Shown in pieces: positions 7,269 to 60,581 of a stretch of 64,000 bases of DNA; positions within the stretch are counted from its first letter, which is position 1, and each line of letters begins with the position of its first letter. Where the stretch lies: positions 152,502-216,501 of IMG/VR virus record IMGVR_UViG_3300043219_000566. One strand, given 5' to 3'. The position numbers and the translations under genes are program-made. Below the pieces are notes generated by a model, which saw nothing but the letters and a program-made list of their open reading frames with translations, had not been told where the DNA came from and did no database searches.

Positions 7269-7311
7269 GGTGTGATTCTACGTCTGCCGCTCGGCAGCTC
7301 CCAAAAATGCC

Positions 7312-7323
7312 GTAGCGCGCTAC
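7312..7323. repeat. 12-bp palindrome GTAGCGCGCTAC (overlaps portal TAG stop)
   Basis: Exact sequence; one of at least 7 copies. Confidence 0.9.
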
Positions 7324-32321: not shown

Positions 32322-33296
32322 TCATACCGCGCCCCCGATTATTCGCAGAATGTGTCTAGCCGCGACCGGAAGCGACAACTCCCGCTCATAGTACTCCCGC
32401 GGGCGGAACGATCTCCAGTCGCCCAGCACTTCGGAGAGAACTTTCACAAACGTGTCCTTGGTGAAGGTACGTCCCGTCTCAGGCGTGATGTATTGGCTGT
32501 GCCAGAGCCGCGTGCCCTCCGAGACAACGATCGGAGTATCGCAGGCCAGAGCCTCGGGAATCACCCGCGGGCAGCTGTCCTTGCCCGCCGTCATCACTAC
32601 GGCGACCTTGGCGCGCGCGTACAGACTCGGCAAGTCAGCACGCCGTACCCAGCCAGTGAAGCTAGTATTGGGAAATTTAGCAGGCCAGCCCCGCCGTCCG
32701 ATTCCCACGTGCAGCAAACGCACCCCGCGCAAATTCGGCAACAGAAAACGATGGCCCTTATTGGCGTTGTGGTTGAAATTGGCCACGTAGATCACGTCGA
32801 ACTCGGGATGAGCAGATATCGGGGAAGCAGGCCGGAAGATATTGTCGGCCGCCGGTTTGACGAACAACTGCGCGTTGTAGCCGTTAGCTTGCGCCCGCTC
32901 CAGCTGCTCGGGTGTGTCTACCAGCACCAGATCCCAGTGCTGCCTCGGCCCGGGGATCACCCGCTGCCCGGCCCCGTAGTGGATCTTGAAGGCCTTCGGG
33001 AACTGCGCAGCCTTGGCCCGATGGATTTTGAAGCCGCCGCGGGTGAACACGACATCCGGGTCAAAGGACACCGGCGTCTGAGCGTAGCGCGCTACCCAGC
33101 GCTCCACGAAGTTCTCGCGGTACTGCGCCCTCCGCTTGCCCTTCTCGTACCACACCTCGCCGTAGCCGCCCGTCTGGTTGACCAGCTCCCAGGCCAGTTG
33201 CGTCCACATGTCGTCGTTCTGCTCCAGCTTGTCGAACATGATCTGACGCGCCGGACGATCGCTAGGCACTTGCCCGCGCAGGAATAACAGTTTCAT
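32322..33296 (-). CDS. GT-B glycosyltransferase (GT4-like)
   Basis: FDVIYVA...KGH...FTGWV...DSCPRVIPEALACDTPIVV. Confidence 0.85.
   Translation of the reverse strand: MKLLFLRGQVPSDRPARQIMFDKLEQNDDMWTQLAWELVNQTGGYGEVWYEKGKRRAQYRENFVERWVARYAQTPVSFDPDVVFTRGGFKIHRAKAAQFPKAFKIHYGAGQRVIPGPRQHWDLVLVDTPEQLERAQANGYNAQLFVKPAADNIFRPASPISAHPEFDVIYVANFNHNANKGHRFLLPNLRGVRLLHVGIGRRGWPAKFPNTSFTGWVRRADLPSLYARAKVAVVMTAGKDSCPRVIPEALACDTPIVVSEGTRLWHSQYITPETGRTFTKDTFVKVLSEVLGDWRSFRPREYYERELSLPVAARHILRIIGGAV
33084..33095. repeat. 12-bp palindrome GTAGCGCGCTAC (in frame, encodes VARY)
   Basis: Exact sequence. Confidence 0.9.
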
Positions 33297-33338
33297 GCAG
33301 TTTCCTCGACGAGAACCGATCACCACAGCTCAACGACG

Positions 33339-33692: not shown

Positions 33693-34463
33693 TCAAAACC
33701 ATTCGTCAACGCGCCCGCCCATGATCTCGAACAACTTCCGATTCCACGGTTTGTAAAACTTCCGCAGCTCGGCCCGTAAGCCGGGGTCCATGTCGCAGCC
33801 GTGATCCGTCTTCCAATTGCGAAACGCGCCTGCCACCGGAGCAGGCCGGTCCCGCTCAACGAACTTCATCTCGACTGTCTTGGGGGTGTAGGGATCAACA
33901 CCCAGCCACGCGAACAGCTTATTGGTCTCGACAGTCGTGTTAGCCGCCATGCGCTCCTGCACCAAGAAGTACAGCTGCGCGCGCCAGTCGGAGAAAAATG
34001 GGAATACCGCCCGCTCCAACTGCTGGAAATACTGCCCACGTTTCCGTGGGCTCGACCCAGCCGAGAACCGCTTGAACTTCTTGATCTTCACCGGCTTGAG
34101 ATGGTGCATCCAGAACTCGCTCAACATCCGGTCCACCGGCTCACGCACACAGAGAATCAGCTTCACCCCGGGGATCTGGCTGCTGATCCGGCGCAGAGCC
34201 ATCGGGCTCTCGATGTAGTTGGCGCACTTCTCCCCGGCCAACTGCGTTGCGTTGCTGAAGCAACCCTGATACCAGCCGGTACCCCGGGAGAAAACGTGAT
34301 ACGGCCCATCGTTGTTCCAGAAGCGGATCTCCGTCGAAGTCCGCTTCGGGTCCTCCGCATTCTTGCCCATCGTGATCTGCGGGTGCTCATTCAAATTCCG
34401 CCACAGCGCAGTCGTCCCGCACTTCATGGAACCAACAATGATGAAATCAGGAAACTTGGGCAC
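33693..34463 (-). CDS. PAPS-dependent sulfotransferase (Sulfotransfer_1 type)
   Basis: 5'-PSB loop PDFIIVGSMKCGTTAL; GEKCANY; 3'-PB motif VREPVDRMLS; LRKFYKPWN. Confidence 0.9.
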   Translation of the reverse strand: MPKFPDFIIVGSMKCGTTALWRNLNEHPQITMGKNAEDPKRTSTEIRFWNNDGPYHVFSRGTGWYQGCFSNATQLAGEKCANYIESPMALRRISSQIPGVKLILCVREPVDRMLSEFWMHHLKPVKIKKFKRFSAGSSPRKRGQYFQQLERAVFPFFSDWRAQLYFLVQERMAANTTVETNKLFAWLGVDPYTPKTVEMKFVERDRPAPVAGAFRNWKTDHGCDMDPGLRAELRKFYKPWNRKLFEIMGGRVDEWF

Positions 34464-34496
34464 GCCGGATCTCCAGAGCACAACGAGTATGGCTTA

Positions 34497-36417: not shown

Positions 36418-37431
36418 TCAAGACAACTCGAACGACCGCTCAAGAGCTTCCAAATCGTCCAGACTGGTCAACGCTGCTCTGGTATTCAACAGATACATGC
36501 GCACCCAGCGCTCCGTTAACGACAGCTCGTGATCAACAAACGCACGTCGGAAGTGCAGGTAGCCGCGCCGAGCCATTTCCACTAGCCCCTCCGGCGCGCT
36601 GAGCAACCGCTCCAGACAAGGCACGATGTTTCTGTCCAGCGTGCAGTAGTGATCCTCCGCGCGAAAATCGGCGATCTGGACCTGTTCTCGCTCGTTGATC
36701 GCATCCAGCAGCAACCCGCTGCCCGCCGCCATCACTTCCCACTCACGACGACAACGAAAACCGGAGCCCGGCGGAGAGTAGCACAACAACGCTCGGCCCA
36801 TTCCCCGCAGGTACCCCCGGGGCCTGAGCGCCGCGTTCGAGATACGAAACCGCAGCCCCAGCCGCTTACAGGCCTCGCGCAGCTCGTTAACCCGGCGATG
36901 CCGGTACCGGCGCTTGGGCTCGGCCGCGTTCATGTTGCCAATGAAAAATACGTCTAGCTCACGCGGTCCATCCTTGGGCACCGGCGGAGGATTAGCGAGC
37001 CAGGCATAATGCACCCGCGGCACTGGAAATTGCGGGAAAACCCACAAATTGTAGGTCTGCTGAGCGACGTCAACCGACGTACCCCCCAACGAGCGCCGCG
37101 ACAAGTTGGCCTTGAGGTACACGTGCCGCTCGCAGCAATGCTCCAACAAATGCGGACGCACGATCGAGCCATCGTAGATATCGGTGAACAGCACGCGAGC
37201 TTCGGTATCGCGCAGCAACCGCGCCCAGTATTCGTCGGGCACCATACGCATCCCGAGCTTACACACGGCAACGTAGCCCGGCCCCCGCGGAAACGTCGCA
37301 TGGACCTCGGGCATGAACCCCCGTACAGCTGCCTCGTCTTTGAAATACAGGAATCCCGGGTGCTTGCCCAAATGAATGACCGGATGCCCGTGGTAATGAT
37401 CGGCTTTGTAGCCGCGATCAACTAAGCGCAT
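36418..37431 (-). CDS. GT-B glycosyltransferase-like (CgeB/exostosin-like C-terminus)
   Basis: DVFFIGN...YLRGM...CYSPPGSGFRCRREWEVMAAG...EMARRGY. Confidence 0.7.
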   Translation of the reverse strand: MRLVDRGYKADHYHGHPVIHLGKHPGFLYFKDEAAVRGFMPEVHATFPRGPGYVAVCKLGMRMVPDEYWARLLRDTEARVLFTDIYDGSIVRPHLLEHCCERHVYLKANLSRRSLGGTSVDVAQQTYNLWVFPQFPVPRVHYAWLANPPPVPKDGPRELDVFFIGNMNAAEPKRRYRHRRVNELREACKRLGLRFRISNAALRPRGYLRGMGRALLCYSPPGSGFRCRREWEVMAAGSGLLLDAINEREQVQIADFRAEDHYCTLDRNIVPCLERLLSAPEGLVEMARRGYLHFRRAFVDHELSLTERWVRMYLLNTRAALTSLDDLEALERSFELS

Positions 37432-37447
37432 CAGTTGTTCTCCCGGA

Positions 37448-38176
37448 TCAATATCCGTACACGTCCAGCATGCCCCCAGCCTCGCGGCGAATGATACGCC
37501 GGTCATTTGGCGTCAATCGCGCCCGCGACTCAGCGTCGAAATCAGGATGGCGGCCCAATGGGAACGGGCGACCGTACATGTTCTGCCGCCGGACCGGCGC
37601 GGACAGATCGACCGGCACCGACGCGAGCCCCAGCTCCGCAAGAATACGATCCACGCTGGCCTGGGGCTCGGCGACCAGCGCCTCGTACCGCACCACCAAA
37701 TGACGAACCTGAGCAGCATCGTCCCGCATGATCCGATTGGCCTCACGCCACTGCCTAGCACAGCGCGCGATATCGTGCCCGCGCCGACGCCGCAAACCCT
37801 CGGCCACGGCGTAACCGTCGCGAACCAGGCAGATGAAGATTGCCGGAACGAAGACCGCATTCATGAAGCGCAGGCGCAGAGCATTGTGCGGGCTCTTTTC
37901 CAGCAAGACCTCCCGGTTGCGATCCCACTTGCGGTAGAACGCATTTCGCAATCGTGCCACGTCGCGCGTCGCCACGTCCCGCTCGGTCATACAGAACTTC
38001 TTGGGGTACAAGGCGAACAGCCGCTTGGTCTTCGGCCCACGATCGCGCGGCAGTACCCGGCTGTAGTGATGACCCTCCTTGGGTAAAGTCGACACGGCAG
38101 GATGTTGAGCCAGTAATCCGCGAAGCAAACCGCTCCCGGAGTTGGTCGTTCCCGCGATAAAAGCATGCAGCCGCAT
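37448..38176 (-). CDS. Sulfotransferase (Sulfotransfer_3 type)
   Basis: FIAGTTNSGSGLL..LLAQHP, LEKSPHN, VRDGYAVAEG, VRYEALV; likely start ATG at 38176. Confidence 0.85.
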   Translation of the reverse strand: MRLHAFIAGTTNSGSGLLRGLLAQHPAVSTLPKEGHHYSRVLPRDRGPKTKRLFALYPKKFCMTERDVATRDVARLRNAFYRKWDRNREVLLEKSPHNALRLRFMNAVFVPAIFICLVRDGYAVAEGLRRRRGHDIARCARQWREANRIMRDDAAQVRHLVVRYEALVAEPQASVDRILAELGLASVPVDLSAPVRRQNMYGRPFPLGRHPDFDAESRARLTPNDRRIIRREAGGMLDVYGY

Positions 38177-38178
38177 CG

Positions 38179-38847
38179 TCACACCCACCGTGTGAAACGA
38201 GCTTTTGGCCCCCGCCGGGCAATCTGATGCCGCGCCGCCCACGGCCGCCCGATATCGCGCACCAATACCACGCCCTTGCGCGACGAGTGCATGACCGCGC
38301 AGCGCTCGCGGGAAGCAATACCCCAGGCTTTCCAGCGATACACCTCGTGCAGCTGCGTCTCCGGGTTGAAGCTCTCGTCCAACTTCCCGGCCACCCGGCT
38401 GTAAAACGCGCGACACGTCACGCCCGGAGCCAACGCGATCCGCTGCGACTTGTGCGACTGCGCCCGTCCGACGAAACGAACCTGGTAAATTCCTGGATGA
38501 GCATCGAAAGCACGGTAGACATCGGCCATGCGCGTATCGTTGATCATCTCCCAGTCGTCCTCCAGGTGCAGGATGAACTGGGTATCGGCCTGAGACCAGA
38601 GCCAGTTGATCGCTGCCGTAAAGTTGGGTTTCGCCGAGCAACGCGACACGACCGTGCCAAAGAACCTCCGCGCCACGGCGAGTACGTCGTCGGCCGTGTA
38701 TTTACCTGCCGGAGCTGGATCGACGTTGATATACAGCGTCAGATACTTGAAATCCACATCCTTCAAATGCTTCTGAAATGAAGCGTAGGTACGCCGCAGC
38801 AGGTCCGGCCGCAGCATAGCCGTCGTCGTCACCGAGAGCAGCTTCAT
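38179..38847 (-). CDS. GT-A glycosyltransferase-like
   Basis: TTTAMLRPDLL, INVD, FILHLEDDW, DIGR. Confidence 0.75.
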   Translation of the reverse strand: MKLLSVTTTAMLRPDLLRRTYASFQKHLKDVDFKYLTLYINVDPAPAGKYTADDVLAVARRFFGTVVSRCSAKPNFTAAINWLWSQADTQFILHLEDDWEMINDTRMADVYRAFDAHPGIYQVRFVGRAQSHKSQRIALAPGVTCRAFYSRVAGKLDESFNPETQLHEVYRWKAWGIASRERCAVMHSSRKGVVLVRDIGRPWAARHQIARRGPKARFTRWV

Positions 38848-39572
38848 GCGATTACCCACTCGCTGCCGTAGATCGCTCGGTACTGTTCCCAGACCCCGGC
38901 TCGCAACTGCTCGTCGAACTCGGGCAACAACTGCCCGGGATTGCGCCGGGAGCTATCCCACTTGTTGAATATCTCCCGCGGCGCGGCATCGAGCGTGCGG
39001 GCATTGCTCTGGGCATACTCGTAACGTACGATCCGCCCTCCAGATTCCAGCGCGTCCTGAGCAAACAAGCTCCATTCCCGAATCCAGAAGCTGATACTCG
39101 CTGCCGCATTTACCCCGCCAGTATTAGCGACGAACTCGAAGTGGCGTTTGGGCTTGGTCAAGCTGATGTACTGGTGCACCGGATGCCGAACAATGCAGAT
39201 CAGATCTCGGATCACGTCTCGGTTGCGGGAGAAGAAACCAAACATGGGAGCCCGACTGAACATCGTGACTTTGCGCGGACGACCCTTCATCCAGTGACAG
39301 TAGGCCAGCAAGTTCTGCTCGATGGTTAACCGCTCGTCGCACTGGTAACCAGTACGCCGGTGGAAACCCGCGATTGAAGCCGCAGACGGCCGCGCCGCGT
39401 AACCACGGTGGTCTAACTGCTGATCGAACTTGGTAGCCGACTTTTGTTGCTGCGGAAAGTACCACGGCAACCAATAGGTCTCCGGACGGTAGTGACCGGT
39501 GTAACGTCGCTCAAGCCGTCGTTTCAGCCACGTCGAGCCCGAACCCCCGTAGCAAGCGAAAGCGTACTTCAC
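38844..39572 (-). CDS. Sulfotransferase-fold protein
   Basis: CYGGSGSTWL, VRHPVHQYIS, IVRYE; GTGA-coupled start. Confidence 0.65.
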   Translation of the reverse strand: MKYAFACYGGSGSTWLKRRLERRYTGHYRPETYWLPWYFPQQQKSATKFDQQLDHRGYAARPSAASIAGFHRRTGYQCDERLTIEQNLLAYCHWMKGRPRKVTMFSRAPMFGFFSRNRDVIRDLICIVRHPVHQYISLTKPKRHFEFVANTGGVNAAASISFWIREWSLFAQDALESGGRIVRYEYAQSNARTLDAAPREIFNKWDSSRRNPGQLLPEFDEQLRAGVWEQYRAIYGSEWVIA

Positions 39573-40303
39573 AGCATCTCCCTTCCGAAGCGCCGACGCA
39601 ATTGTCGCGCAAACCGCGGCAGCAGCAGCGCGTACGGAAACGGGCGCGGTGACGACGGAATCTTCCACCGCGCAAGATACCAGGCCAAGATAAACTCGGG
39701 TACGCCGCAGCGATACTTGCGAATCGCACCCAGAATCTCGTCACTCAGCAGCTCGGAGTACAACGCAGCATAAACCCGCATCTGCGCGGGACGCCCTGCC
39801 AGAAACGTGTCGTTGATAGCGTAGCCCGCGCTCGGCAAGCCCTTCACCTTGAAGTTCGAGTAGCACAGCTCCGTGCGAGTCCACGCCAGCAACTTATCCC
39901 AGTCGAGACAGAACGTCGGGTACCAGTCGAAACGGCAACGCAGAATGATGTCGTACTCGTCGAGGTTCCCGATCAACTCGAAAGCACTTTGAATCGTCAA
40001 ATACTGGGCAAATAGCCCGGTCTTGATGCTGAAGCGCTTGCGTTGAAACGGCAGTTGTTCGACCTGTGCGGCTTTGGCCGTGACCTCAGCCGCGACCGCG
40101 TCCCAGGAATGAAGCACCAGCTTACGTGGGCTGTACGTATCCGCAAGCGCCGCCCGGCCCTGCTCACAGCTGTAACCCTCGTCAAACGTGTCCCAGGCAT
40201 AGACATACGTATCGACCTCCTGATCACCGAGCATCTTCCGCCAGGCCGGGGCCGTCTTGGCGAACGTCCGCGGCATACCGCCGAACACCACAGCTACTTT
40301 CAT
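39569..40303 (-). CDS. Putative glycosyl/phospho-transferase-like protein of phage glycan loci
   Basis: MKVAVVFGGMPRTF...YDIILRCRFD...INDTFLAG...PE; ATGA-coupled to the GDPD-like gene. Confidence 0.55.
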   Translation of the reverse strand: MKVAVVFGGMPRTFAKTAPAWRKMLGDQEVDTYVYAWDTFDEGYSCEQGRAALADTYSPRKLVLHSWDAVAAEVTAKAAQVEQLPFQRKRFSIKTGLFAQYLTIQSAFELIGNLDEYDIILRCRFDWYPTFCLDWDKLLAWTRTELCYSNFKVKGLPSAGYAINDTFLAGRPAQMRVYAALYSELLSDEILGAIRKYRCGVPEFILAWYLARWKIPSSPRPFPYALLLPRFARQLRRRFGREML

Positions 40304-40749
40304 GACGTCGCTCCAATGTAACGAGCTGGGTAATCCGAGCAAATCGCGTAGCAGCCCCGCAGCTCATCCGGCGTGTAATTGGCCTGCTCGGGCAATACCG
40401 CGATGCTGCGCTGGGTCAACTGCGCACCGGTCCGCGTCCACACAAGCCCGCACGAAGTCAACGCTACCGCATCCTGGTCGTGAAAGAACACGTGTGCGTA
40501 ATTGAGCAGACGGCAAAGCGCTTCGACATTCTTGGCATGAACCCAAATGTCAGGCTGAGCCAGCCAAAATAGCTCAATGGGCTCCGACGGGCCGTCATGC
40601 CCTAGCCACAGCTCACCCTCATGCCACCAAACGTCGACCTCGACCTGAAAGCCCGCCGCACGCGCAGATTCCAGATACTCAAGCCGATTCTCGCGATTTA
40701 CCACCCGTCCAGCTACATTTCCGCGATGGCTGATGGGTCTTTGATCCAT
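40300..40749 (-). CDS. Minimal glycerophosphodiester phosphodiesterase (GDPD)-like protein
   Basis: ISHRGN, EN, VEVDVW, LGHD, HAKN, ICSDY. Confidence 0.8.
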   Translation of the reverse strand: MDQRPISHRGNVAGRVVNRENRLEYLESARAAGFQVEVDVWWHEGELWLGHDGPSEPIELFWLAQPDIWVHAKNVEALCRLLNYAHVFFHDQDAVALTSCGLVWTRTGAQLTQRSIAVLPEQANYTPDELRGCYAICSDYPARYIGATS

Positions 40750-41336
40750 TTCCGTACCACCGTAATGCCCCAGTCATCGTCGCGCTCCTTGAAGAACTGG
40801 TTCACGTCGAACAGCTCGCGATCGATAGCCGGGAGCAATGCAACCGGACCGGGATGAAAATTCGTGTCATGCAGCACAATAACGCCGAACGGCGAGACAA
40901 ACTCGGCGTAGCGCCAATCGCGCACTACCTGATCGACCGAGTGCCAACCGTCGATGTGTAAGAAGTCGATCACCCGCTCACCGCATAGCTCCTCGACCTT
41001 GGCCATCACGCGCTCTAGGTCCGAGGAGTCGCAGCGCAACGTATGCACGTTGGCGCGCTCGATGTAGCACTTGTCCTGCGTGTCCACGCCCAGGTAAAGC
41101 ACGTCGGCGGGCAATTCCACCAGCAGCACCTGCGTACCGGATGCACCGTCCCCGTGATTGGATACGCCAATTTCCAAAACCAAACGCCTCTGTCCCGCTA
41201 GCGAACGAAATGCTTCGCGCAACACGCTCTGATCGCGCGTAGAGTACACTCTGGAAATGCGCTTCTTAGCCGCAGCAAAATTGGGCGGACGATCCTTGTC
41301 ACCGTTGCTCGGAACATAGGTTAATCCGTAACTCAT
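40713..41336 (-). CDS. Class I SAM-dependent methyltransferase (Methyltransf_24-like)
   Basis: VLEIGV, YLGVD, CDS, IDFLHIDGWHS, GVIVLHDT. Confidence 0.85.
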   Translation of the reverse strand: MSYGLTYVPSNGDKDRPPNFAAAKKRISRVYSTRDQSVLREAFRSLAGQRRLVLEIGVSNHGDGASGTQVLLVELPADVLYLGVDTQDKCYIERANVHTLRCDSSDLERVMAKVEELCGERVIDFLHIDGWHSVDQVVRDWRYAEFVSPFGVIVLHDTNFHPGPVALLPAIDRELFDVNQFFKERDDDWGITVVRKWIKDPSAIAEM

Positions 41337-42529
41337 TCAGTTACTCCCCATAGTCGAATAGCCTGACGGTACTCAGCTCCGTGCTCACCGTCGATCGCCT
41401 GGCGCATCGCCCGCGCGCCTGCCAAGGTTCCGCCGGGATGACCGTGAATACTGCCGCCACAATTCGCCAGCCAGTCGTTACCGAAGCGCTTGACAATCGC
41501 TTGCACCAGCCCCGGGTGCAACCCGCAGCTGAGCGCAGGCAGCACGTCGGCTTGCCGCAGGACGGCCAGCGTCGCGCTCAGCTCATCCTCCGGATCAGAC
41601 AGATACCCGCCCCACATCCCGGCATGAATGAAGTCGACGCCCATCAGGCCCGCCAGCTTGCAAATCACGTTCCAAGAGATGTACGCGCGGTCGGTCGGCG
41701 TGGTCATGATGCGATCGCCGCTTTTCTGAAAGAACAACGCCAACGGCAGATCCAGGCGGCGCACGGCCCGATAGGCTCCCAAGCCACTCCAGATATTGAG
41801 ATGCACAGCATTGCCGCCCAGCTCGTGCACCAACGCTACGCGATCCAGCAGTTCCGGTCCGTCGGCGGTCACACAGACCGCGTAGATCACGTGCTTGTCG
41901 TGCAAGTAGTCCATGATCAGCGGCACCCGCTCCTTCAGCGAGCAGCACGCCGGGTTCGACATGATCTCGTCTTCCTTGATGAAATTGACCCCGCCCGCGA
42001 CCAGCTCCTTGACCACAGCTAGTAACGTGGACGGGCTAATACCCACCTTGGGCTTGATAATCCCACCCAGCAGCGGTTTATCGTGGCAACGGGTAGCCTG
42101 ACGGATGCCGCCGAGCCCGTAGCGCGGCGGCAAGAAGCCCGCGCAAGCTGACTTCGGGATCTCCAGCCCGAGCAATCCGCAGCCCTCGATGAGATCGATG
42201 TCGAGCTGACCACCCATCAACTGACACAGCAATTGAGATATGCCGTCGTTCGGCAAATCGATATTAGCCAGTGGAAACGCGATCTTCACTTCGCCCTTCC
42301 GGCGGCGCGCCAGATCGTCCGGGTCGTGCGGGATCAGACAACCGTGCTTGCGGAACAGCTCGGGGCTCTCCCACGCGCTGCGCATATTCGGGTTGCCAAT
42401 ACTCTGGCCCACCGCCAATGCCCAAGCTGCCTCCTTCAGCGTAGTACGCGAGCGCAAGTTGTAACGCGCAACGATGTACTCCTCGGGGTCGTACTGGCTC
42501 GTGAAAACAATCGACTCAACTGACGACAT
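41333..42529 (-). CDS. RuBisCO-like protein (form IV, divergent)
   Basis: KPLLGGIIKPKVG, GGVNFIKEDE, GVDFIHAG, PALSCGLHPG, CGGSIHGHPGGTLAGARAMRQAI; 398 aa. Confidence 0.93.
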   Translation of the reverse strand: MSSVESIVFTSQYDPEEYIVARYNLRSRTTLKEAAWALAVGQSIGNPNMRSAWESPELFRKHGCLIPHDPDDLARRRKGEVKIAFPLANIDLPNDGISQLLCQLMGGQLDIDLIEGCGLLGLEIPKSACAGFLPPRYGLGGIRQATRCHDKPLLGGIIKPKVGISPSTLLAVVKELVAGGVNFIKEDEIMSNPACCSLKERVPLIMDYLHDKHVIYAVCVTADGPELLDRVALVHELGGNAVHLNIWSGLGAYRAVRRLDLPLALFFQKSGDRIMTTPTDRAYISWNVICKLAGLMGVDFIHAGMWGGYLSDPEDELSATLAVLRQADVLPALSCGLHPGLVQAIVKRFGNDWLANCGGSIHGHPGGTLAGARAMRQAIDGEHGAEYRQAIRLWGVTE

Positions 42530-42839
42530 GCTTGTCTCCCGGCCGCGAAGGGATCTTGACCACGATCAGCTCGCAGTCCTCGTGGAAGACGGGGTCCGCT
42601 AGCTCAAAGGGATGCAGGACAAATACGTCACCGGCCTGCAACTCGCGGTCTTGGATACGCATTCTTCCACGGATGAGGTAGTTGACCTCTACGGATTTCT
42701 TGTGATAGTGCCTCGGCCACTCCTCGCCTTGCCGATGCCGCAGATACCCGACCTCGCAGTCGGCAGTCTGAAAGGCCGCAGGCTCGAAGTTGCCTACGAA
42801 CCAGCCGCCTTCCATCGTCTTGATGTGGCGAATGTCCAT
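42516..42839 (-). CDS. Cupin-fold protein
   Basis: GGWFVGNFEP, HYHKKSVEVNYLIRG, GDVFVL, VVKIPS. Confidence 0.85.
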   Translation of the reverse strand: MDIRHIKTMEGGWFVGNFEPAAFQTADCEVGYLRHRQGEEWPRHYHKKSVEVNYLIRGRMRIQDRELQAGDVFVLHPFELADPVFHEDCELIVVKIPSRPGDKHVVS

Positions 42840-42840
42840 G

Positions 42841-43566
42841 CTACTCGTGGGGCAAGTCTCCCCGCCTCAACTTCTCCAGGAACAACTCCAAGTCCTCGGG
42901 AATCCCAATCGCGTGATGAACCTCCGCCGGAATGCGGTAGACCACCACCTTTGAGCCTGCCTTGATCATGGCGTTGTACGTCGGGCACACGTACGGCTCG
43001 CCATCGTGAGCGCGTTCACCGGTCTGAGCAGCTCGAATGAAGTCCCGCCCGTGACGCCACCAGTGAATGCCGTTGCTGGCGATATCGCTGATGACCCGCT
43101 TCTCGACGATAAGGTCGACGACGTCGTTGTCGTCGACGCGCACGAAGCAGTCCGTCGCCCGACTGCACGGATAGCAAACCACGATGCCGTCTGCGCTAGT
43201 GTGCTCGATGAAAGTCAGAAAGCGCTGCGGGTTCCACGTCATGTACTGATCGCAGTTGGCGATCACCAGCTCGTCGTCGTTGTTGATCAACGCCACAGCC
43301 TGTATGCACGTGTCTGCCGGTCCAGCGGTATCGTCGACAATCACGATCTCCGCCTCGGGATAGTGCTCCAGCACGACCGCATCGATCCCGTAGCGCCTCA
43401 CATGCTCACGATGCAGACAGAAAATCAACCGACCCGGCAGATCCAACGTATCGACCGCCCGCTTGAACATCGGCTCCCCCGCCACGTCGATAAGAGGTTT
43501 GATCGTGTCGATGTTGCCGAACCGCGCTCCACGGCCTGCCATAGGGATAAGAACGTTCCTGCTCAT
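42841..43566 (-). CDS. Sugar-phosphate nucleotidyltransferase
   Basis: IPMAGRGARF, KPLIDV.GEPM, T.GPA.T, IANCDQ, IVEK, IGIPEDL. Confidence 0.9.
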   Translation of the reverse strand: MSRNVLIPMAGRGARFGNIDTIKPLIDVAGEPMFKRAVDTLDLPGRLIFCLHREHVRRYGIDAVVLEHYPEAEIVIVDDTAGPADTCIQAVALINNDDELVIANCDQYMTWNPQRFLTFIEHTSADGIVVCYPCSRATDCFVRVDDNDVVDLIVEKRVISDIASNGIHWWRHGRDFIRAAQTGERAHDGEPYVCPTYNAMIKAGSKVVVYRIPAEVHHAIGIPEDLELFLEKLRRGDLPHE

Positions 43567-44477
43567 CAGCTCTCCAATCGTGTAACGAATTCGCGCATCC
43601 GTTCAGCCCGCGTACCGAACTTCGCGTGCAGCAACTCCACCATATTGGTATTGAGACGCTGCCGCAAACTCTCATCTCGCAACAACCGCGAAACGTAACG
43701 AGCCGCAGTATCGATGTCGCGCGCCGGGTAAACCAACGCAGTCTGCTCGTGGATAGCGTAGTCCTGCATCCCGCTGCGCGGGTGATCGGTACAGACCAGC
43801 GCGCAGCCCGCCAGCGCCGCCTCGATCGGTGGATTGTGCAGGCCCTCCAGCTCGGTGGGCGCAAACCAGACCTTCAGTCCGTTGTACCAGTTGTTCAGCC
43901 GCTCCGGAGTCGGACGCTTGATATGGCGATTGAGCTGCTGGATCGGCTGATCAAGCTGACGTTCGAGAAAGTCGATGTCGCCGTTGCGCTTGGTCGCATG
44001 GCGATTGTTGCGCAGAGCCCCCGCCCCGGCCCGCACGCGCGGAACCAGGTGAAACCAGTGCGGGTCCAGCCCCGGGTACTGCAGCATCACCGAGATCCCG
44101 TACTCTCGCATGTAGGCGTAGAGCCACTGGGAGTTCACGAAGACGCGATCGACCGCCCGAAACGAGCGCAGTAACGTCGCCTCGGTGGCTTTCCACAGCT
44201 CCAGGCCGCGCACGTAGTAGGTCTGCAACCGAGCGGAAGTGTAGCGCGCTACAGATCTGACGCTGTTGATCCCGGTCGCGATGGTCACGTCGCAGGGCGG
44301 ATGCGTCTCGCCCCCGATGCACTCGATCTTCGCCGGATGCCAAGTGTAACGGCTACGTCCACAATGAAAGAAGGCCTTGTGCCCTAGCTCGCGCAGCGTC
44401 TCCACGCAACGCACCAGCGTACGGGAGCCGCCGTTGTTAGCTAGCCCCACGCCGCGCATGTTAAAGCAAATTCTCAT
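43566..44477 (-). CDS. GT-B glycosyltransferase (GT4-like)
   Basis: NNGGSRTL, VNSQWL, EGLHNPPIEAALAGC. Confidence 0.85.
   Translation of the reverse strand: MRICFNMRGVGLANNGGSRTLVRCVETLRELGHKAFFHCGRSRYTWHPAKIECIGGETHPPCDVTIATGINSVRSVARYTSARLQTYYVRGLELWKATEATLLRSFRAVDRVFVNSQWLYAYMREYGISVMLQYPGLDPHWFHLVPRVRAGAGALRNNRHATKRNGDIDFLERQLDQPIQQLNRHIKRPTPERLNNWYNGLKVWFAPTELEGLHNPPIEAALAGCALVCTDHPRSGMQDYAIHEQTALVYPARDIDTAARYVSRLLRDESLRQRLNTNMVELLHAKFGTRAERMREFVTRLES
44241..44252. repeat. 12-bp palindrome GTAGCGCGCTAC (in frame, VARY; extends to 14 bp)
   Basis: tGTAGCGCGCTACa. Confidence 0.9.
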
Positions 44478-44794
44478 AGCTTTATCCGTGCCCAGTGTTC
44501 TTCTGGCTCGTCACATTCGATCACGAGCATGCGAACAACCAGAGCCGGAATGGAAAAAGGCACAAAGCCCCTCAGCCCTCGGCGGCCCATGTTGATTTCC
44601 CAAAACTGCAGCTGCCCCCACTCACCATTCGGCTCGCCGTCTATCGCTCCTAAGAACCGCACCAGTTGCCCTTGGCCCTGAGACCCGAGTTTTCGGAAAG
44701 CATCGATGAACACCGGAACCACGCGGCCAATGTTGGATTCGTCGACAACTTGTCCATCGTACTCGGTAGATAACATCACCACGTACTCCTTCAT
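44474..44794 (-). CDS. Hypothetical protein
   Basis: Stop coupled (ATGA) to the glycosyltransferase start. Confidence 0.55.
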   Translation of the reverse strand: MKEYVVMLSTEYDGQVVDESNIGRVVPVFIDAFRKLGSQGQGQLVRFLGAIDGEPNGEWGQLQFWEINMGRRGLRGFVPFSIPALVVRMLVIECDEPEEHWARIKL

Positions 44795-44801
44795 CACCCG
44801 C

Positions 44802-45602
44802 CTACGTCGCACCAGGAATTTCGGCATCGGCGTCCACGGCATTGGGCCATAGGTCCAGCGCCTTCCGCGGGTCTTCGGCATCGTACTCCCAGAACAGCCG
44901 CCAACGCCAAGCCGGAGCAGGCGGGATTTTGCGGTGCTCAGCCGCGAGCACCACCGACGTCGGAGTATCCGGGTTCACGCGTAGCAAGTGGTTCAGATTG
45001 ATATTGCGATTTTGGCATTCCCAGTTACGTCGACGGACCTGACGAATCCGGATGTCACCGATCAACGTAAGGTGCTCGATGCACTTCTTGTACGGAAACT
45101 TTCCGGTCGCAAAGCCAGCAGCAGTCTCACAAAAACGCGTGAGCGTGAACGGCACCTGCTTGTCGCGCGCCTGCGTCATCAGTGAATCACCCGGAAACTT
45201 GATCTCGGGCATGACCACCACCGTTAGCTCAGGATTTGTCCTATTCGTCTGCGGATGCCAGTGGCCATCCATCTCGCGCTCAAAGAAACGACACCAACGC
45301 AACCACTCCCAATCCGGCTCGGACATAATCGCGCCTGGCCGATGAGTTCCGCGCGCCCGCTCGCCCCTGCAACGCAGCACGCGCTTACCCCGCACCGCAT
45401 CGAGCGCGTGACCAATGTGCGCAGCTGTGCTGCTAGAATAGGTTTCGTCGGGATGCCGAATGTAAAAGATATCCTCCCCCACCCTCCGTCCAATCTCGTA
45501 CCAACTGTGAGACCACAGACTGATCCCGTCTGTGGACATACGGGAACCCCCGCGCTGCTTCCTGGAGATCCAGGCCGCAGCCACGTCGCTATGACTAACC
45601 AT
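44802..45602 (-). CDS. Hypothetical protein
   Basis: GAGGT RBS before ATG at 45602. Confidence 0.6.
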   Translation of the reverse strand: MVSHSDVAAAWISRKQRGGSRMSTDGISLWSHSWYEIGRRVGEDIFYIRHPDETYSSSTAAHIGHALDAVRGKRVLRCRGERARGTHRPGAIMSEPDWEWLRWCRFFEREMDGHWHPQTNRTNPELTVVVMPEIKFPGDSLMTQARDKQVPFTLTRFCETAAGFATGKFPYKKCIEHLTLIGDIRIRQVRRRNWECQNRNINLNHLLRVNPDTPTSVVLAAEHRKIPPAPAWRWRLFWEYDAEDPRKALDLWPNAVDADAEIPGAT

Positions 45603-45615
45603 CGTTACCTCAGAA

Positions 45616-46029
45616 TCAATCGAAACCGGTGAATACCTCATTGGAGAATTTGTCTGCTTCGGAAGCCTCGGGCTGCAAAAGGCCCTGCTTCTCTTTGGCC
45701 CGCTCCCAACGCTGCATAACCGTTGCAACGAACTCGCTCATAACGGCCCGGCGCAATCGGTCGATCAGCTCGCGAAAGCGTGCGTTGTCAGTAGAGCGCA
45801 GATTCGCAAACCCGCGCGTAGCGGTAGAGACTCCGATAACCATGCCTTTGTGCTGAATGGGGTTGCTAGTCTGTACGATGTGATCGTACAGCGCATGACC
45901 GATGATCTTGGATTGCTCCGACGGGCCAAACTTACCTTTCAGCGGCACGCCCCGCCCTTGAAAATCGATACCATCGATCACCCGGTCGCGCTCGCGCTCG
46001 GCTAACTGCACTAGCTGCGCAAAAGTCAC
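45616..46029 (-). CDS. Hypothetical protein
   Basis: GTGA coupling to the upstream kinase. Confidence 0.55.
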   Translation of the reverse strand: MTFAQLVQLAERERDRVIDGIDFQGRGVPLKGKFGPSEQSKIIGHALYDHIVQTSNPIQHKGMVIGVSTATRGFANLRSTDNARFRELIDRLRRAVMSEFVATVMQRWERAKEKQGLLQPEASEADKFSNEVFTGFD

Positions 46030-47060
46030 AGCCCGTTCTCCTTGATGTGCCGATCCAGCGCTGCCAGCAACTGTTCGCGGCTGACCGCGTTCGTATCGTG
46101 GTGCTGCACCGCCTCGGCAGCAGCAACATTGGCGAGCAACGCCGCGTCCGGAGACGATAACCCGCAGGCACAAGCCCAGGCGTAGGTCGCCAGCACGGTA
46201 TCACCCGCGCCGGTGACATTGTACACCTCGCGCGCAAACCGCGGCAGGCAGAGCTGCTCAGCTAGATCATCGTAGACCAGCGTCATGCCGTCCCGCCCAC
46301 GAGTGATAAGCAGCTCATCGATACCCAGAGTCTTAGCAAACTCCCGCGGAGCAACAACCTTACCGGCGTCGTCCAGCTGCCCGCCCATGCGCTCGAACTC
46401 GCGCAAATTGGGCTTCAGCGTAGTGTGGCTGCCGACGTTGGCGCGGTACATGGGTAGCGATTCAGGCTTGCACTCCAGGTAGCAGCGCGCGCGGGACGCG
46501 CGGATGGGCTCCAGCACGTCTTCGGCTATCGTGCCCTTGTCGTAATCAGCCACCACGATGCCGCAGACCATGGAATTGGACAGCGCTGTACGCAGCTCCT
46601 GACACAGGCGATTACGACTTCTCTTGTCGCCGCGGCAGTCTGCGGCAAGAGTAACCGACTCGTCGACCCGCAGCAGCTGCTGCTGATGCTCGGCGATGTA
46701 CCGCGTCTTCCGCTCGGTTCGCAAAGCCGGGAAAGTTACTAGCTGAGCACTGCAGCAGCCAGAAAAGTACGCGGTCAGAAAAGCCCCGTCTTCGTCGCTA
46801 CCCACCCGGCCAACGAGAGCGACCAACGCACCTAACTTCATCAAGTTGTGGGCAACGTTAGCCGCCCCGCCAGGGCACAGGCGAGTACAAGACTGTTGTA
46901 AAACAGGCACCGGGGCTTCGGGCGAGATACGCTTCACCTCGCCGTAAACGTAGCAATCGACCATCACGTCGCCGATAACGACGAAGCGCGGAGCCACGCT
47001 AGAAACCTGACGCAAGTTCTTCGCCGCCGAAACGAGGAATCGTTTGGTGTCGTCGTTCAT
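46026..47060 (-). CDS. HldE/RfaE kinase domain-like (heptose-7-phosphate kinase, PfkB family), stand-alone
   Basis: VIGDVMVDCYVYGEVKRISPEAPVPV, GGAANVA, LLRVD, DYDKG, KPNLREF, NVTGAGDTV. Confidence 0.9.
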   Translation of the reverse strand: MNDDTKRFLVSAAKNLRQVSSVAPRFVVIGDVMVDCYVYGEVKRISPEAPVPVLQQSCTRLCPGGAANVAHNLMKLGALVALVGRVGSDEDGAFLTAYFSGCCSAQLVTFPALRTERKTRYIAEHQQQLLRVDESVTLAADCRGDKRSRNRLCQELRTALSNSMVCGIVVADYDKGTIAEDVLEPIRASRARCYLECKPESLPMYRANVGSHTTLKPNLREFERMGGQLDDAGKVVAPREFAKTLGIDELLITRGRDGMTLVYDDLAEQLCLPRFAREVYNVTGAGDTVLATYAWACACGLSSPDAALLANVAAAEAVQHHDTNAVSREQLLAALDRHIKENGL

Positions 47061-51129: not shown

Positions 51130-51612
51130 CTACTCAGGCCACTCGGGGGCGCGCGGAACTGTAATTCCGACATACCAGCAATCCTCAACGAAACATCCCG
51201 CGTGCTTGACCTCCGGCTCGATCACCACGCCCATGCCTGGCAGCAGCCGCTGGTCCTCGTGGCCGTCCCGTTTGAGTATCATCGATCCGGCGTAGATGAT
51301 CAGCCACTCACGCTGGGAATGCGTATGGACCGGGAACTCGGTACCGGCCGAACTAAACCAGCGCGCGCACGAGACTTCGTCCTGCGACAGCAAATTCCAC
51401 GACAGACTGGTGCCCTTGCTCATGACGTGCTGTTTGAGCCCATCGACATCGGGACCGGTGGTTTCCGGGAAATGAGGCAAACAGTCCGTCATGACCCGCA
51501 GCCGCTTCAGCGACTCGGGACGTGCCGAACAACTGCCGCGCTCCTCAGTTTCGCCAACAGGGCGGCAAGTTTCCCCAGTCTGGCACTCTCCGTCGTTGCA
51601 GGATCGTTTCAT
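51130..51612 (-). CDS. Cupin-fold protein
   Basis: GTEFPVHTHSQREWLIIYAG...PEVKH. Confidence 0.75.
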   Translation of the reverse strand: MKRSCNDGECQTGETCRPVGETEERGSCSARPESLKRLRVMTDCLPHFPETTGPDVDGLKQHVMSKGTSLSWNLLSQDEVSCARWFSSAGTEFPVHTHSQREWLIIYAGSMILKRDGHEDQRLLPGMGVVIEPEVKHAGCFVEDCWYVGITVPRAPEWPE

Positions 51613-51913
51613 CGTCGTTCTCCAACGGCACCGCAGAATCAGCAAAAATCCGCCCGGTCACCAGCGAGGTTTGATCAACGTCGGTATTGAAAACGATATC
51701 GAAGCCAAGGGAATTAGCTTCACCGCTCACTTCGACAGACGCTACACGCGCGTCACGAGACACTCTGCCCGCGACCTCCTTGGCCACCTGCAGACTCAAA
51801 CCAGGGTCCTGCACGTTCGCAAATACGCCGGTGCAGCCACGCGAGATCGCTTCGCTCGCGCATTCTAGCAACACAGCGGTTAACTGACATTTTGGACACG
51901 GATCGTCTGCCAT
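51545..51913 (-). CDS. Hypothetical protein
   Basis: GGAG RBS; CPKC. Confidence 0.5.
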   Translation of the reverse strand: MADDPCPKCQLTAVLLECASEAISRGCTGVFANVQDPGLSLQVAKEVAGRVSRDARVASVEVSGEANSLGFDIVFNTDVDQTSLVTGRIFADSAVPLENDDETILQRRRVPDWGNLPPCWRN

Positions 51914-60463: not shown

Positions 60464-60581
60464 TCTAAAACTCCTGCTTTCTCTTGGCAGGTTGCAAGCC
60501 CGCCTCAACCGGGGGCTCCACTACGTGGATTCCACGCTACGCTACTGCTGTATTTGGACTATCAATCTTCGCAGAATTGCA

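What the first reader, a model, noticed from the sequence alone, without database searches (positions are those of the whole stretch)
39569..44477. RuBisCO-like protein in a biosynthetic nucleotide-sugar operon of a phage: candidate undescribed pathway
Seen: overlapping or abutting genes in the order GT4-like > nucleotidyltransferase > cupin > RuBisCO-like protein > SAM methyltransferase > GDPD-like > transferase-like, then sulfotransferases and GTs. Established: characterised form IV RLPs are enolases, isomerases, decarboxylases or transcarboxylases in methionine salvage or sugar-acid catabolism in cells; cupins often act as sugar epimerases or isomerases. No methionine-salvage or Calvin-cycle genes are present here. 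Inference: the RLP is used anabolically, rearranging a host sugar phosphate through an enediolate into an unusual (possibly branched) unit. That unit would be isomerised (cupin), NDP-activated, methylated and transferred to the phage glycan, with the GDPD-like enzyme trimming a phosphodiester or cyclic-phosphate intermediate. The actual substrate cannot be read from the sequence.
Basis: partly seen in the sequence, partly recalled or inferred. Interest (0 to 1): 0.92.

Follow-up and report, generated by a model that had tools for sequence, protein, structure and literature searches.

The report
RuBisCO-like enzyme in viral sugar cassette
A non-carboxylating relative of RuBisCO sits in a tightly linked set of sugar-activating and sugar-transferring genes that recurs in hundreds of uncultivated phages, giant viruses and some microbes, so it most likely helps build an unusual surface sugar rather than fix carbon.

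Summary
Window 39569-43566 (minus strand) holds six overlapping or abutting genes. In order they are a sugar-phosphate nucleotidyltransferase (NT), a small cupin, a RuBisCO-like protein (RLP), a SAM methyltransferase, a 149-aa mini-GDPD and a GT-A glycosyltransferase. They lie inside a larger glycan island.

IMG/VR holds 235 relatives of the RLP. Of 64 related viral loci with full flanks, NT lies within 5 kb of the RLP in 63, mini-GDPD in 59, the cupin in 53, and all three in 49. Gene order is shuffled, and NT-RLP, NT-cupin, MT-GDPD and GDPD-GT fusions exist.

The RLP keeps the Mg/carbamate enolisation residues but has lost the carboxylation residues. It reaches no curated family cut-off and forms its own clade.

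NT, mini-GDPD and GT form a wider viral chassis that is also found in cultured cyanophages. There the NT is normally fused to a beta-phosphoglucomutase-like HAD domain instead (0/11 against 58/68, p = 4e-8). This suggests that the RLP supplies the NT's phospho-sugar.

Substrate, product and step order remain unknown. I found no description of the cassette in the literature. Related viral genes are currently annotated as "rbcL" and read as carbon-fixation genes.

The parts
42841..43566 (-). NT: sugar-phosphate nucleotidyltransferase (241 aa, GxGxR motif)
   Evidence: PF12804 1e-7. Family profile A5 hits PDB 4evw 'NDP-sugar pyrophosphorylase' at 1e-36, and GDP-Man PPase, HddC and RmlA at about 1e-10. 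Within 5 kb of the RLP in 63/64 fully flanked viral loci. Fused to the RLP in proteins of about 637 aa.
42516..42839 (-). Small metal-type cupin (107 aa; H44, H46, E51)
   Evidence: Profile A3 shows the HxH...E motif and hits cupin_2, quercetinase and a small M6P-isomerase structure at 4e-5 to 3e-4. Present in 53/64 loci. 17 NT-cupin fusions.
41333..42529 (-). RuBisCO-like protein (398 aa), non-carboxylating
   Evidence: PF00016 4.5e-35. Below every NCBIfam cut-off. Residue map. Own clade, SH-aLRT 100. 235 relatives in IMG/VR.
40713..41336 (-). Class I SAM methyltransferase, TylF/Methyltransf_24-like (207 aa); optional module member
   Evidence: PF13578 7.9e-5. Profile A4 hits demethylmacrocin O-MT weakly. 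Present in 22/64 loci. MT-P149 fusions.
40300..40749 (-). P149: mini-GDPD-like phosphodiesterase (149 aa; invariant H8 R9 E20 N21 E37 D39 H51 H71 K73 H90 C137)
   Evidence: Profile A2 against PDB GDPDs, 4.8e-5. AlphaFold pLDDT 96.5, best fold match GDPD 1vd6. Present in 59/64 loci. 3040 representatives in the 1.84e9-protein library.
39569..40303 (-). c5-family GT-A (GT8/glycogenin-like) glycosyltransferase (244 aa); its ATG overlaps the P149 stop (ATGA)
   Evidence: Local HMM E 2e-20. AlphaFold pLDDT 84; Foldseek hits glycogenin at 2e-6, prob 1.0. Present in 33/64 loci, often as tandem paralogues. At least 8 P149-c5 fusion representatives.
43566..44477 (-). GT1/GT4-type glycosyltransferase; window-specific neighbour, not part of the conserved module
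   Evidence: PF00534 7.5e-9. No homologue next to the RLP in 90 other loci.
46026..47060 (-). PfkB kinase resembling heptose-7-phosphate kinase (RfaE domain I); window-specific
   Evidence: TIGR02198 240.9 bits, below the 345 cut-off. A weak relative (25% identity) in only 1 of the 90 other RLP loci (L069).
37448..38641 (-). Sulfotransferase (glycan tailoring; island member)
   Evidence: PF13469 5.9e-20.
33693..34481 (-). Sulfotransferase (island member)
   Evidence: PF00685 2.6e-9.
32322..33326 (-). GT1-type glycosyltransferase (island member)
   Evidence: PF13692 2.2e-10.

Best explanation
The RLP is the signature enzyme of a mobile cassette for surface-glycan synthesis: NT, cupin, RLP, optional O-methyltransferase, mini-GDPD and GT-A glycosyltransferase.

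Proposed mechanism. The RLP uses its retained Mg2+/carbamylated-lysine site to enolise a phosphorylated keto-sugar taken from host metabolism. It re-protonates it into a rearranged phospho-sugar (carbonyl shift and/or epimerisation, with no CO2 addition). This product, after optional cupin-catalysed isomerisation or epimerisation, is the substrate of the NT, which makes an NDP-sugar. GT-A paralogues transfer the sugar to a glycan, a methyltransferase O-methylates it, and the mini-GDPD carries out a phosphodiester step at the transfer or tailoring stage.

The RLP is thus an alternative front end that feeds the NT. In most related viral loci that place is taken by a beta-phosphoglucomutase-like HAD domain fused to the NT.

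Shown here: the gene linkage, the fusions, the residue pattern, the separate clade, the glycan context, and the anticorrelation between RLP and HAD-NT. Inferred: the order of steps, the reaction type, and glycan decoration as the end use. Unknown: substrate and product.
For: (1) Linkage. Of 64 viral loci with at least 5 kb on both sides of the RLP, NT lies within 5 kb in 63, P149 in 59, the cupin in 53, and all three in 49. There are 32 different gene orders.

(2) Rosetta-stone fusions: NT-RLP (8 of the top 120 clusters; domains verified), NT-cupin x17, NT-P149, MT-P149 and P149-c5, and P149 with WavE, GT61 and a sulfotransferase.

(3) Residues. K175/K177, K201/D203/E204, H327, S379, G381 and G403/G404 equivalents are invariant. 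N123->Q, H294->Q, K334->Y and R295->K.

(4) Below all NCBIfam equivalog cut-offs: type III 172.6 against 497, MtnW 140.7 against 409, OiaX 138.9 against 700. Separate clade with SH-aLRT 100.

(5) Neighbours across loci are glycan genes: GDP-Man dehydratase-type SDRs, DegT, UDP-GlcNAc 2-epimerase, GT1/2/10/11, and FkbM and TylF methyltransferases.

(6) The NT is of the sugar-1-P pyrophosphorylase superfamily, and c5 has a GT-A fold.

(7) HAD-NT fusions occur in 58 of 68 RLP-less NT loci and in 0 of 11 RLP loci, Fisher p = 3.9e-8.

(8) The conserved module contains no recurrent kinase or mutase, so the phosphate must come with the substrate.
Against: No enzyme was assayed and the substrate cannot be read from sequence.

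The cupin and P149 occur with the same NT family without any RLP, so the pathway order is not fixed by the data.

Two loci (L031, L091) combine the RLP with only a HAD-NT, so the two are not strictly alternative.

Both RuBisCO phosphate sites look partly retained (K269, H302; G336, G358, G359). That fits a bisphosphate or otherwise doubly anionic substrate, which complicates a simple 'sugar monophosphate in, sugar-1-P out' scheme.

The reference set in the tree lacked MtnW, DeepYkr, Photo and GOS sequences.

Glycan decoration of virions or of the host surface has not been shown for any carrier.
Confidence: 0.62

Rival explanations
1. Nucleotide-handle pathway to a small molecule. The NT attaches an NMP/NDP handle to a phospho-metabolite made by the RLP and cupin, the methyltransferase modifies the tagged intermediate, and the mini-GDPD then cleaves the handle off. 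This is the logic of fosfomycin biosynthesis (cytidylyltransferase, methyltransferase, FomD hydrolase, cupin epoxidase). The end product would be a free metabolite, not a glycan unit.
For: NT and P149 are the most tightly coupled pair, with or without the RLP: 35 of 45 NT loci and 59/64 RLP loci. MT-P149 and NT-P149 fusions exist. P149 keeps all GDPD catalytic residues. The analogy came from PMC9088020, listed, and from established knowledge of the Fom pathway.
Against: P149 is most often fused to GT-A (c5), WavE-like, GT61 and sulfotransferase domains. The loci are full of glycosyltransferases and NDP-sugar-modifying enzymes. The methyltransferase is present in only about a third of loci.
Confidence: 0.15
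2. Salvage or catabolic auxiliary gene. The RLP works as in methionine salvage or the MTA-isoprenoid shunt, where an RLP is paired with a cupin (acireductone dioxygenase, or 1-methylthioxylulose-5-P methylsulfurylase in Rhodospirillum rubrum). It would recycle SAM or nucleoside by-products during infection, and its place in a glycan island would be incidental.
For: RLP and cupin are adjacent, as in known salvage routes (established knowledge). The NT has a faint IspD-like signal (PF01128 1.7e-3). A related cyanophage locus carries a class II aldolase/MtnB/AraD-family protein and HAD enzymes.
Against: MtnW models score 111-141 bits against cut-offs of 409-514. The MtnW-type lysine at the N123 position is a glutamine here (the lysine role is from established knowledge). 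No mtnA/B/K/X/D or dxr was found among the roughly 50 window ORFs scanned. Fusion of the RLP to a sugar-1-P-type NT and co-inheritance with GT-A genes are not expected for salvage.
Confidence: 0.08
3. A genuine carboxylase or form III-like RuBisCO acting in nucleotide salvage or carbon fixation. This is how viral 'rbcL' genes are usually read in AMG surveys.
For: The best NCBIfam hit is type III RuBisCO (1.2e-50). K175, K177, K201, D203 and E204 equivalents are kept. JGI names family members 'ribulose-bisphosphate carboxylase large chain'. Relatives occur in CPR and DPANN MAGs. Papers report viral rbcL as carbon-fixation AMGs (PMC12615777, PMC8506154).
Against: H294->Q, K334->Y and N123->Q are invariant across 91 sequences; by established knowledge these residues are needed for carboxylation. 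The type III score is 172.6 against a cut-off of 497. No AMP phosphorylase, R15P isomerase, PRK or small subunit was found among the recurrent gene clusters annotated in the 91 loci.
Confidence: 0.03

Closest known systems
Form IV RuBisCO-like proteins (MtnW/YkrW enolase, R. rubrum MTRu-1-P isomerase, OiaX-type apionate-pathway RLPs)
   Same: Same superfamily fold (PF00016). Retains the Mg2+/carbamate enolisation core, has lost the carboxylation residues, and is likely to act on a phosphorylated keto-sugar through an enediolate. Like the R. rubrum and methionine-salvage systems, it is paired with a cupin.
   Different: It is a separate clade and lies below all curated cut-offs. It keeps both K175 and K177 and has Q at position 123. 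The context is anabolic (NT, GTs, methyltransferases), not salvage or sugar-acid catabolism, and lacks a four-carbon acid sugar kinase (contrast). It is fused to a nucleotidyltransferase in some members and is predominantly viral in the collections searched.
Bifunctional GDP-mannose pyrophosphorylase / type II phosphomannose isomerase (NTP_transferase + C-terminal cupin)
   Same: The NT-cupin fusions of the module (17 in the loci) have the same domain order. This suggests that the cupin is a sugar-phosphate isomerase working alongside the pyrophosphorylase.
   Different: The cupin shows only generic cupin_2-level similarity. The NT belongs to the uncharacterised 4evw family. No phosphomannomutase is associated.
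NDP-heptose pathway logic (isomerase, anomeric kinase, HAD phosphatase, nucleotidyltransferase)
   Same: The NT profile hits HddC-type enzymes (about 6e-10). The window has an RfaE-like kinase. HAD domains and heptose-type genes accompany the same NT/P149/GT chassis in cyanophages S-SM2 and S-CAM9.
   Different: The kinase is not conserved with the module, GmhA is absent, and no RLP takes part in any known heptose route.
Glycerophosphodiester phosphodiesterases (GDPD / PLC-like phosphodiesterase barrel)
   Same: P149 has the HR...EN...ExD...H catalytic motif, and a GDPD is its best fold match.
   Different: It is about 60% of the normal length, gets no Pfam GDPD hit, and matches the fold only moderately (TM 0.53). 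It is a huge, entirely unannotated family that is fused to glycosyltransferases and tailoring enzymes.

Membership tests
RuBisCO large-subunit superfamily | Catalytic TIM-barrel domain (PF00016) above the gathering score | tested here: met
   121.8 bits against a cut-off of 30.1, E 4.5e-35. 99 PDB RuBisCO/RLP chains matched.
Bona fide RuBisCO (forms I-III) | Full catalytic set including N123, H294 and K334 (spinach numbering) | tested here: not met
   Q108, Q268 and Y309 occupy these positions, in 98-100% of the 91 family members (Q268 and Y309 invariant). The Mg ligands and K175/K177 are retained.
Bona fide RuBisCO (forms I-III) | Score above the NCBIfam equivalog cut-offs | tested here: not met
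   Type III 172.6 against 497.45, PRK04208 150.6 against 438, form II 73 against 489.
MtnW/YkrW DK-MTP-1-P enolase | Equivalog HMM cut-off and a methionine-salvage gene context | tested here: not met
   NF007095 140.7 against 409; TIGR03332 111.4 against 513.6. No mtn genes among the ORFs scanned.
OiaX-type / sugar-acid catabolic RLPs | Equivalog cut-off, clade membership, and an adjacent four-carbon acid sugar kinase | tested here: not met
   138.9 against 700. Separate clade in the tree. The kinase is present beside the plasmid RLPs but absent here.
IV-DeepYkr (R. rubrum MTRu-1-P isomerase with cupin methylsulfurylase) | Clade membership; a cupin orthologous to the methylsulfurylase | not testable with these tools
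   No labelled reference sequence could be fetched. Only the superficial RLP + cupin pairing is shared.
IV-GOS clade of RLPs | Clustering with the Global Ocean Sampling RLP sequences | not testable with these tools
   No reference sequences were held. Many family members come from Tara and other marine samples, so identity with IV-GOS is possible.
Sugar-phosphate nucleotidyltransferase superfamily (NT) | GxGxR(x)nK signature and the NTP_transferase fold family | tested here: met
   Invariant G11, G13, R15 and K23. PF12804 and PF00483 hits. PDB 4evw at 1e-36, and RmlA, GMP and HddC at about 1e-10.
GDPD (PF03009) for P149 | Catalytic His/Arg/Glu/Asp/His motif on a full PLC-like barrel | tested here: inconclusive
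   The motif is present and invariant, and the fold match is best to GDPD (prob 0.97, TM 0.53, E 1e-2). There is no Pfam hit, and the protein is only 149 aa.
GT-A glycosyltransferases (GT8-like) for ORF 39569-40303 | GT-A Rossmann-like fold with an acidic metal-binding motif | tested here: inconclusive
   Foldseek hits glycogenin at 2e-6, prob 1.0, TM about 0.5, with 166 hits at E<=1e-3. Conserved YD...RFD acidic residues. No Pfam or PDB sequence hit.
Cupin superfamily | Motif 1 G(x)5HxH(x)3-4E(x)6G | tested here: met
   H44, H46, E51 and G58 are conserved. Cupin_2 structures hit at 4e-5 to 6e-4.

The most novel reading that the evidence does not exclude
This clade would be the first anabolic RuBisCO-superfamily enzyme. 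By walking the carbonyl along a host ketose phosphate, it would convert a distal-phosphate sugar into a 1-phospho sugar without a kinase or mutase. That would replace the beta-phosphoglucomutase-type domain normally fused to this NT and create a previously unknown NDP-sugar. The mini-GDPD fused to GT-A enzymes would be a new kind of phosphodiester-forming or phosphodiester-editing transferase. The resulting sugar would decorate virions or infected-cell surfaces of jumbo phages and giant viruses across aquatic habitats. Most viral 'rbcL carbon-fixation AMGs' would then be misread.
Probability: 0.25. Interest if true: 0.92.

Novelty: new variant of a known kind. Interest (0 to 1): 0.8.

Why it matters
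If this reading is right, four things follow.

1. It would add a new, biosynthetic function to the RuBisCO superfamily, whose non-carboxylating members are so far known only from salvage and catabolism.
2. It would define a very abundant but unannotated viral and cellular gene cassette. IMG/VR holds 235 RLP and at least 571 NT relatives. The mini-GDPD family has over 3000 clusters at 50% identity, and every source name seen for it was "hypothetical".
3. It bears on how viral "rbcL" genes are read. Public annotation names these proteins "ribulose-bisphosphate carboxylase large chain". AMG surveys count viral rbcL as carbon fixation (PMC12615777, PMC8506154, PMC11160803). This clade lacks the carboxylation residues and sits in glycan loci. 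I could not check whether the genes in those papers belong to this clade.
4. The shared chassis in cultured Synechococcus phages (S-SM2, S-CAM9) gives a tractable entry point to the biology.

Tried and rejected
- DNA and protein searches of 50,697 GenBank phages with the region and the RLP found nothing, so no cultured phage carries the RLP.
- PLSDB plasmids hold only distant catabolic RLPs, at most 31% identical.
- Pfam and NCBIfam gave nothing for P149, c5, c20 and several window ORFs: 38844-39668, 36418-37506, 44474-44881, 44802-45728 and 45616-46173.
- The c5 profile did not align convincingly to a WavE-annotated protein, although a P149-WavE fusion exists.
- A P149 profile scan of IMG/VR failed for lack of a conserved stretch.
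- The third homology search, with a Bacteroidota-type RLP, returned no organism names.
- Nine of ten allowed literature searches found no description of an RLP linked to NT, cupin or GDPD genes. The Tabita 2007 review could not be read.
- Considered and rejected: methionine salvage, the MTA-isoprenoid shunt, form III nucleotide salvage, and the apionate pathway (see rivals and membership tests).
- Considered but left open: heptose chemistry. It is suggested by the window's RfaE-like kinase and by S-SM2, but the kinase is not conserved with the module.

Full report
**Observation.** All genes between about 28 and 52 kb lie on the minus strand, in a window of uniform composition (G+C 0.57-0.62). 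The finding's span contains, from 5' to 3':
- a GT1/GT4-type glycosyltransferase (43566-44477);
- a nucleotidyltransferase, NT (42841-43566);
- a 107-aa cupin (42516-42839);
- a RuBisCO-like protein, RLP (41333-42529; PF00016 E 4.5e-35);
- a SAM methyltransferase, MT (40713-41336);
- a 149-aa protein, P149 (40300-40749);
- an ORF whose real start is the ATG at 40303 (39569-40303).

Sulfotransferases (37448-38641, 33693-34481) and another GT (32322-33326) follow. Junctions are ATGA overlaps or gaps of 1-2 nt, which suggests one co-translated operon. The window is part of IMG/VR contig UViG_3300043219_000566, 216.5 kb. Its other genes are phage-like. They include an RNR with an intein/HNH insert, a thymidylate synthase, a polynucleotide kinase, HNH endonucleases, and a gene about 50% identical to a gene of many tailed phages that is annotated there as a DNA topoisomerase.

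**The RLP.** It is roughly equidistant from every solved or curated family. Against PDB the best hits are 3nwr at 3.6e-39, a form III enzyme at 7.6e-37, and the Geobacillus enolase at 1.3e-35. Against NCBIfam it scores 172.6 for type III (cut-off 497), 140.7 for MtnW (409) and 138.9 for OiaX (700). An alignment with form I and II enzymes fetched from plasmids maps the canonical residues:
- Retained: K175/K177 (K159, K161), K201/D203/E204 (K185, D187, E188), H327 (H302), S379 (S334) and G381/G403/G404.
- Replaced: N123 by Q108, H294 by Q268, R295 by K269, H298 by D272, K334 by Y309 and G380 by C335.

These states hold in 91-100% of the 91 family members, and in at least 97% for all but D272. 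By established knowledge of RuBisCO catalysis, this pattern keeps metal-assisted enolisation and phosphate binding but not carboxylation. In a 62-sequence ML tree, all NT-linked RLPs form one clade (SH-aLRT 100, long stem). That clade is apart from OiaX-type plasmid RLPs, which sit beside four-carbon acid sugar kinases, and apart from forms I and II. Viral and cellular members interleave. The window's protein is a deep lone branch, at most 71% identical to anything known.

**The conserved cassette.** The RLP family is large: 2731 hits among the candidates scored, most about 393 aa, with many named "ribulose-bisphosphate carboxylase large chain" by JGI. A pattern scan found 235 relatives in IMG/VR, including eight giant-virus MAG contigs among the best 80. 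It also found 11 loci in cellular MAGs: Patescibacteria, Pelagibacteraceae, Verrucomicrobiota, Planctomycetota, DPANN archaea and Bacteroidota.

I ran tblastn of every window operon protein against these 90 loci. Only NT, the cupin, MT and P149 travel with the RLP. With profile HMMs, I counted the 64 viral loci that have at least 5 kb on both sides. NT is within 5 kb in 63, P149 in 59, the cupin in 53, all three in 49, and MT in 22. Gene order varies, with 32 patterns, so selection for co-function rather than mere co-inheritance is the natural reading.

Fusions tie every component together:
- NT-RLP, about 637 aa;
- NT-cupin, 17 cases;
- NT-P149, MT-P149 and P149-c5.

**The other parts.**
- *NT.* It belongs to the sugar-1-phosphate pyrophosphorylase superfamily. 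Its closest solved relative is the uncharacterised Vibrio protein 4evw (1e-36), followed by GDP-mannose, heptose and dTDP-glucose enzymes.
- *Cupin.* It has the HxH...E metal motif but only generic similarity to known cupins.
- *P149.* It has no Pfam hit, but its profile matches the GDPD catalytic motif. A very confident AlphaFold model (pLDDT 96.5) has GDPDs as best fold matches, though only at TM 0.53. The family is enormous and every source name seen for it was "hypothetical": 3040 representatives at 50% identity, 1433 of them at E<=1e-30.
- *ORF 39569-40303.* It belongs to a divergent paralogous family (c5/c20) that is often present in several tandem copies. Its model is a GT-A fold closest to retaining GT8/GT6 enzymes.
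- *P149 fusions.* P149 is fused to c5 in at least eight representative clusters, and also to WavE-like, GT61, methyltransferase and sulfotransferase domains. This places it at the transfer or tailoring end of the pathway.
- *Recurrent neighbours.* These are classic glycan genes.

**A wider chassis, and what the RLP replaces.** P149 homologues occur in 17 GenBank records of Synechococcus myoviruses (about a dozen distinct phages), although none of the 50,697 GenBank phage records has the RLP.
- S-SM2 carries a double NT (3e-100 to the module's NT profile), P149, a c5 GT, a cupin and an AraD/MtnB-family class II aldolase.
- S-CAM9 carries HAD-NT, a separate HAD, P149 and three c5 GTs.

An NT-anchored scan of IMG/VR gave at least 571 relatives. 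Among 45 well-flanked loci, P149 is present in 35, the cupin in 22, c5 in 17 and the RLP in 10. In RLP-less loci the NT carries an N-terminal beta-phosphoglucomutase-family HAD domain (PF13419 3.6e-32; TIGR02009 101 bits). This HAD-NT fusion occurs in 58 of 68 RLP-less loci and in 0 of 11 RLP loci (Fisher p = 3.9e-8). There are two exceptions among the RLP-anchored loci, L031 and L091.

Both the HAD domain and the RLP can be fused to this NT, and they largely exclude each other. The simplest inference is that each supplies the NT's phospho-sugar substrate. No kinase or mutase is conserved with the RLP module, so the phosphate presumably arrives with a host metabolite.

**Mechanism proposed.** The RLP enolises a phosphorylated ketose and re-protonates it to a rearranged phospho-sugar. 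The known precedent is the R. rubrum RLP, which moves a carbonyl by successive 1,3-proton transfers. The cupin isomerises or epimerises, following the precedent of the NT-cupin architecture of PMI-GMP enzymes. The NT then forms the NDP-sugar, GT-A paralogues transfer it, a methyltransferase O-methylates it, and P149 performs a phosphodiester reaction that is still undefined. Only the associations and residue patterns are shown. The reaction order and chemistry are inference, and the substrate is unknown. The partly retained distal phosphate site (K269, H302) hints at a bisphosphate or other dianionic substrate.

**Rivals.** The rival explanations section sets out four alternatives: a nucleotide-handle route to a free metabolite (0.15), salvage-type function (0.08), true carboxylase (0.03), and a residual "other".

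**Novelty and importance.** Nine literature searches found no paper that links an RLP to a nucleotidyltransferase/cupin/GDPD cassette or to nucleotide-sugar synthesis. Viral "rbcL" genes are instead reported as carbon-fixation AMGs. One landfill study notes that its viral RbcL clusters with "RbcL-like" proteins (PMC11160803). I could not test whether those genes belong to this clade. I could not test either whether the clade equals the IV-GOS group of RLPs.

I rate this a new variant of a known kind: a RuBisCO-superfamily enolisation enzyme recruited into an anabolic glycan cassette. A specialist would find it surprising, and it is directly testable. Interest 0.8.

Noticed in passing
window 16715-20173 (-): The ribonucleotide reductase large subunit (1152 aa) is interrupted by an intein-like segment that carries an HNH_3 endonuclease (about aa 400-584), and it has a C-terminal TSCPD domain.
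   Followed up: no
window 3294-5051 (-): A 585-aa fusion of a 2H / 2'-5' RNA-ligase-like domain (N-terminal) with a GNAT acetyltransferase domain (C-terminal).
   Followed up: no
window 61389-63155 (-): A HerA/FtsK-type ATPase (DUF87) that weakly matches a terminase-large-subunit PHROG. Only three distant relatives were found in GenBank phages, so its role (packaging ATPase or helicase) is unclear.
   Followed up: partly
window 51130-51645 (-): A second, weak cupin-like ORF (local cupin HMM E 5e-4) lies outside the cassette.
   Followed up: no
L101:6992-7447 (Synechococcus phage S-CAM9, NC_031922.1): The P149 homologue appears to be annotated too short. gp064 is given as 7163-7450, but the whole ORF from 6992 matches the full P149 profile (E 2.7e-59).
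   Followed up: partly
L100 (Synechococcus phage S-SM2, NC_015279.1, SSM2_204-211): A cultured cyanophage carries an RLP-less version of the cassette: double NT, AraD/MtnB-family class II aldolase, P149, c5 GT and cupin. Its 103-aa 'phosphoheptose isomerase' is too short for GmhA and weakly hits a capsule-biosynthesis phosphatase model.
   Followed up: partly
L092 (GCA_902725615.1, 356-kb cellular contig): The order RLP > cupin > NT > P149 > c20 GT > FkbM MT > beta-PGM-family HAD is flanked by at least six radical SAM/SPASM genes. This suggests further, unusual tailoring chemistry in this cellular version.
   Followed up: no
window 59642-60508 (-) and 46026-47060 (-): A UDP-glucose dehydrogenase-like gene and an RfaE-domain-I-like sugar kinase show that the phage's glycan-related genes spread over at least 28 kb, well beyond the cassette.
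   Followed up: partly
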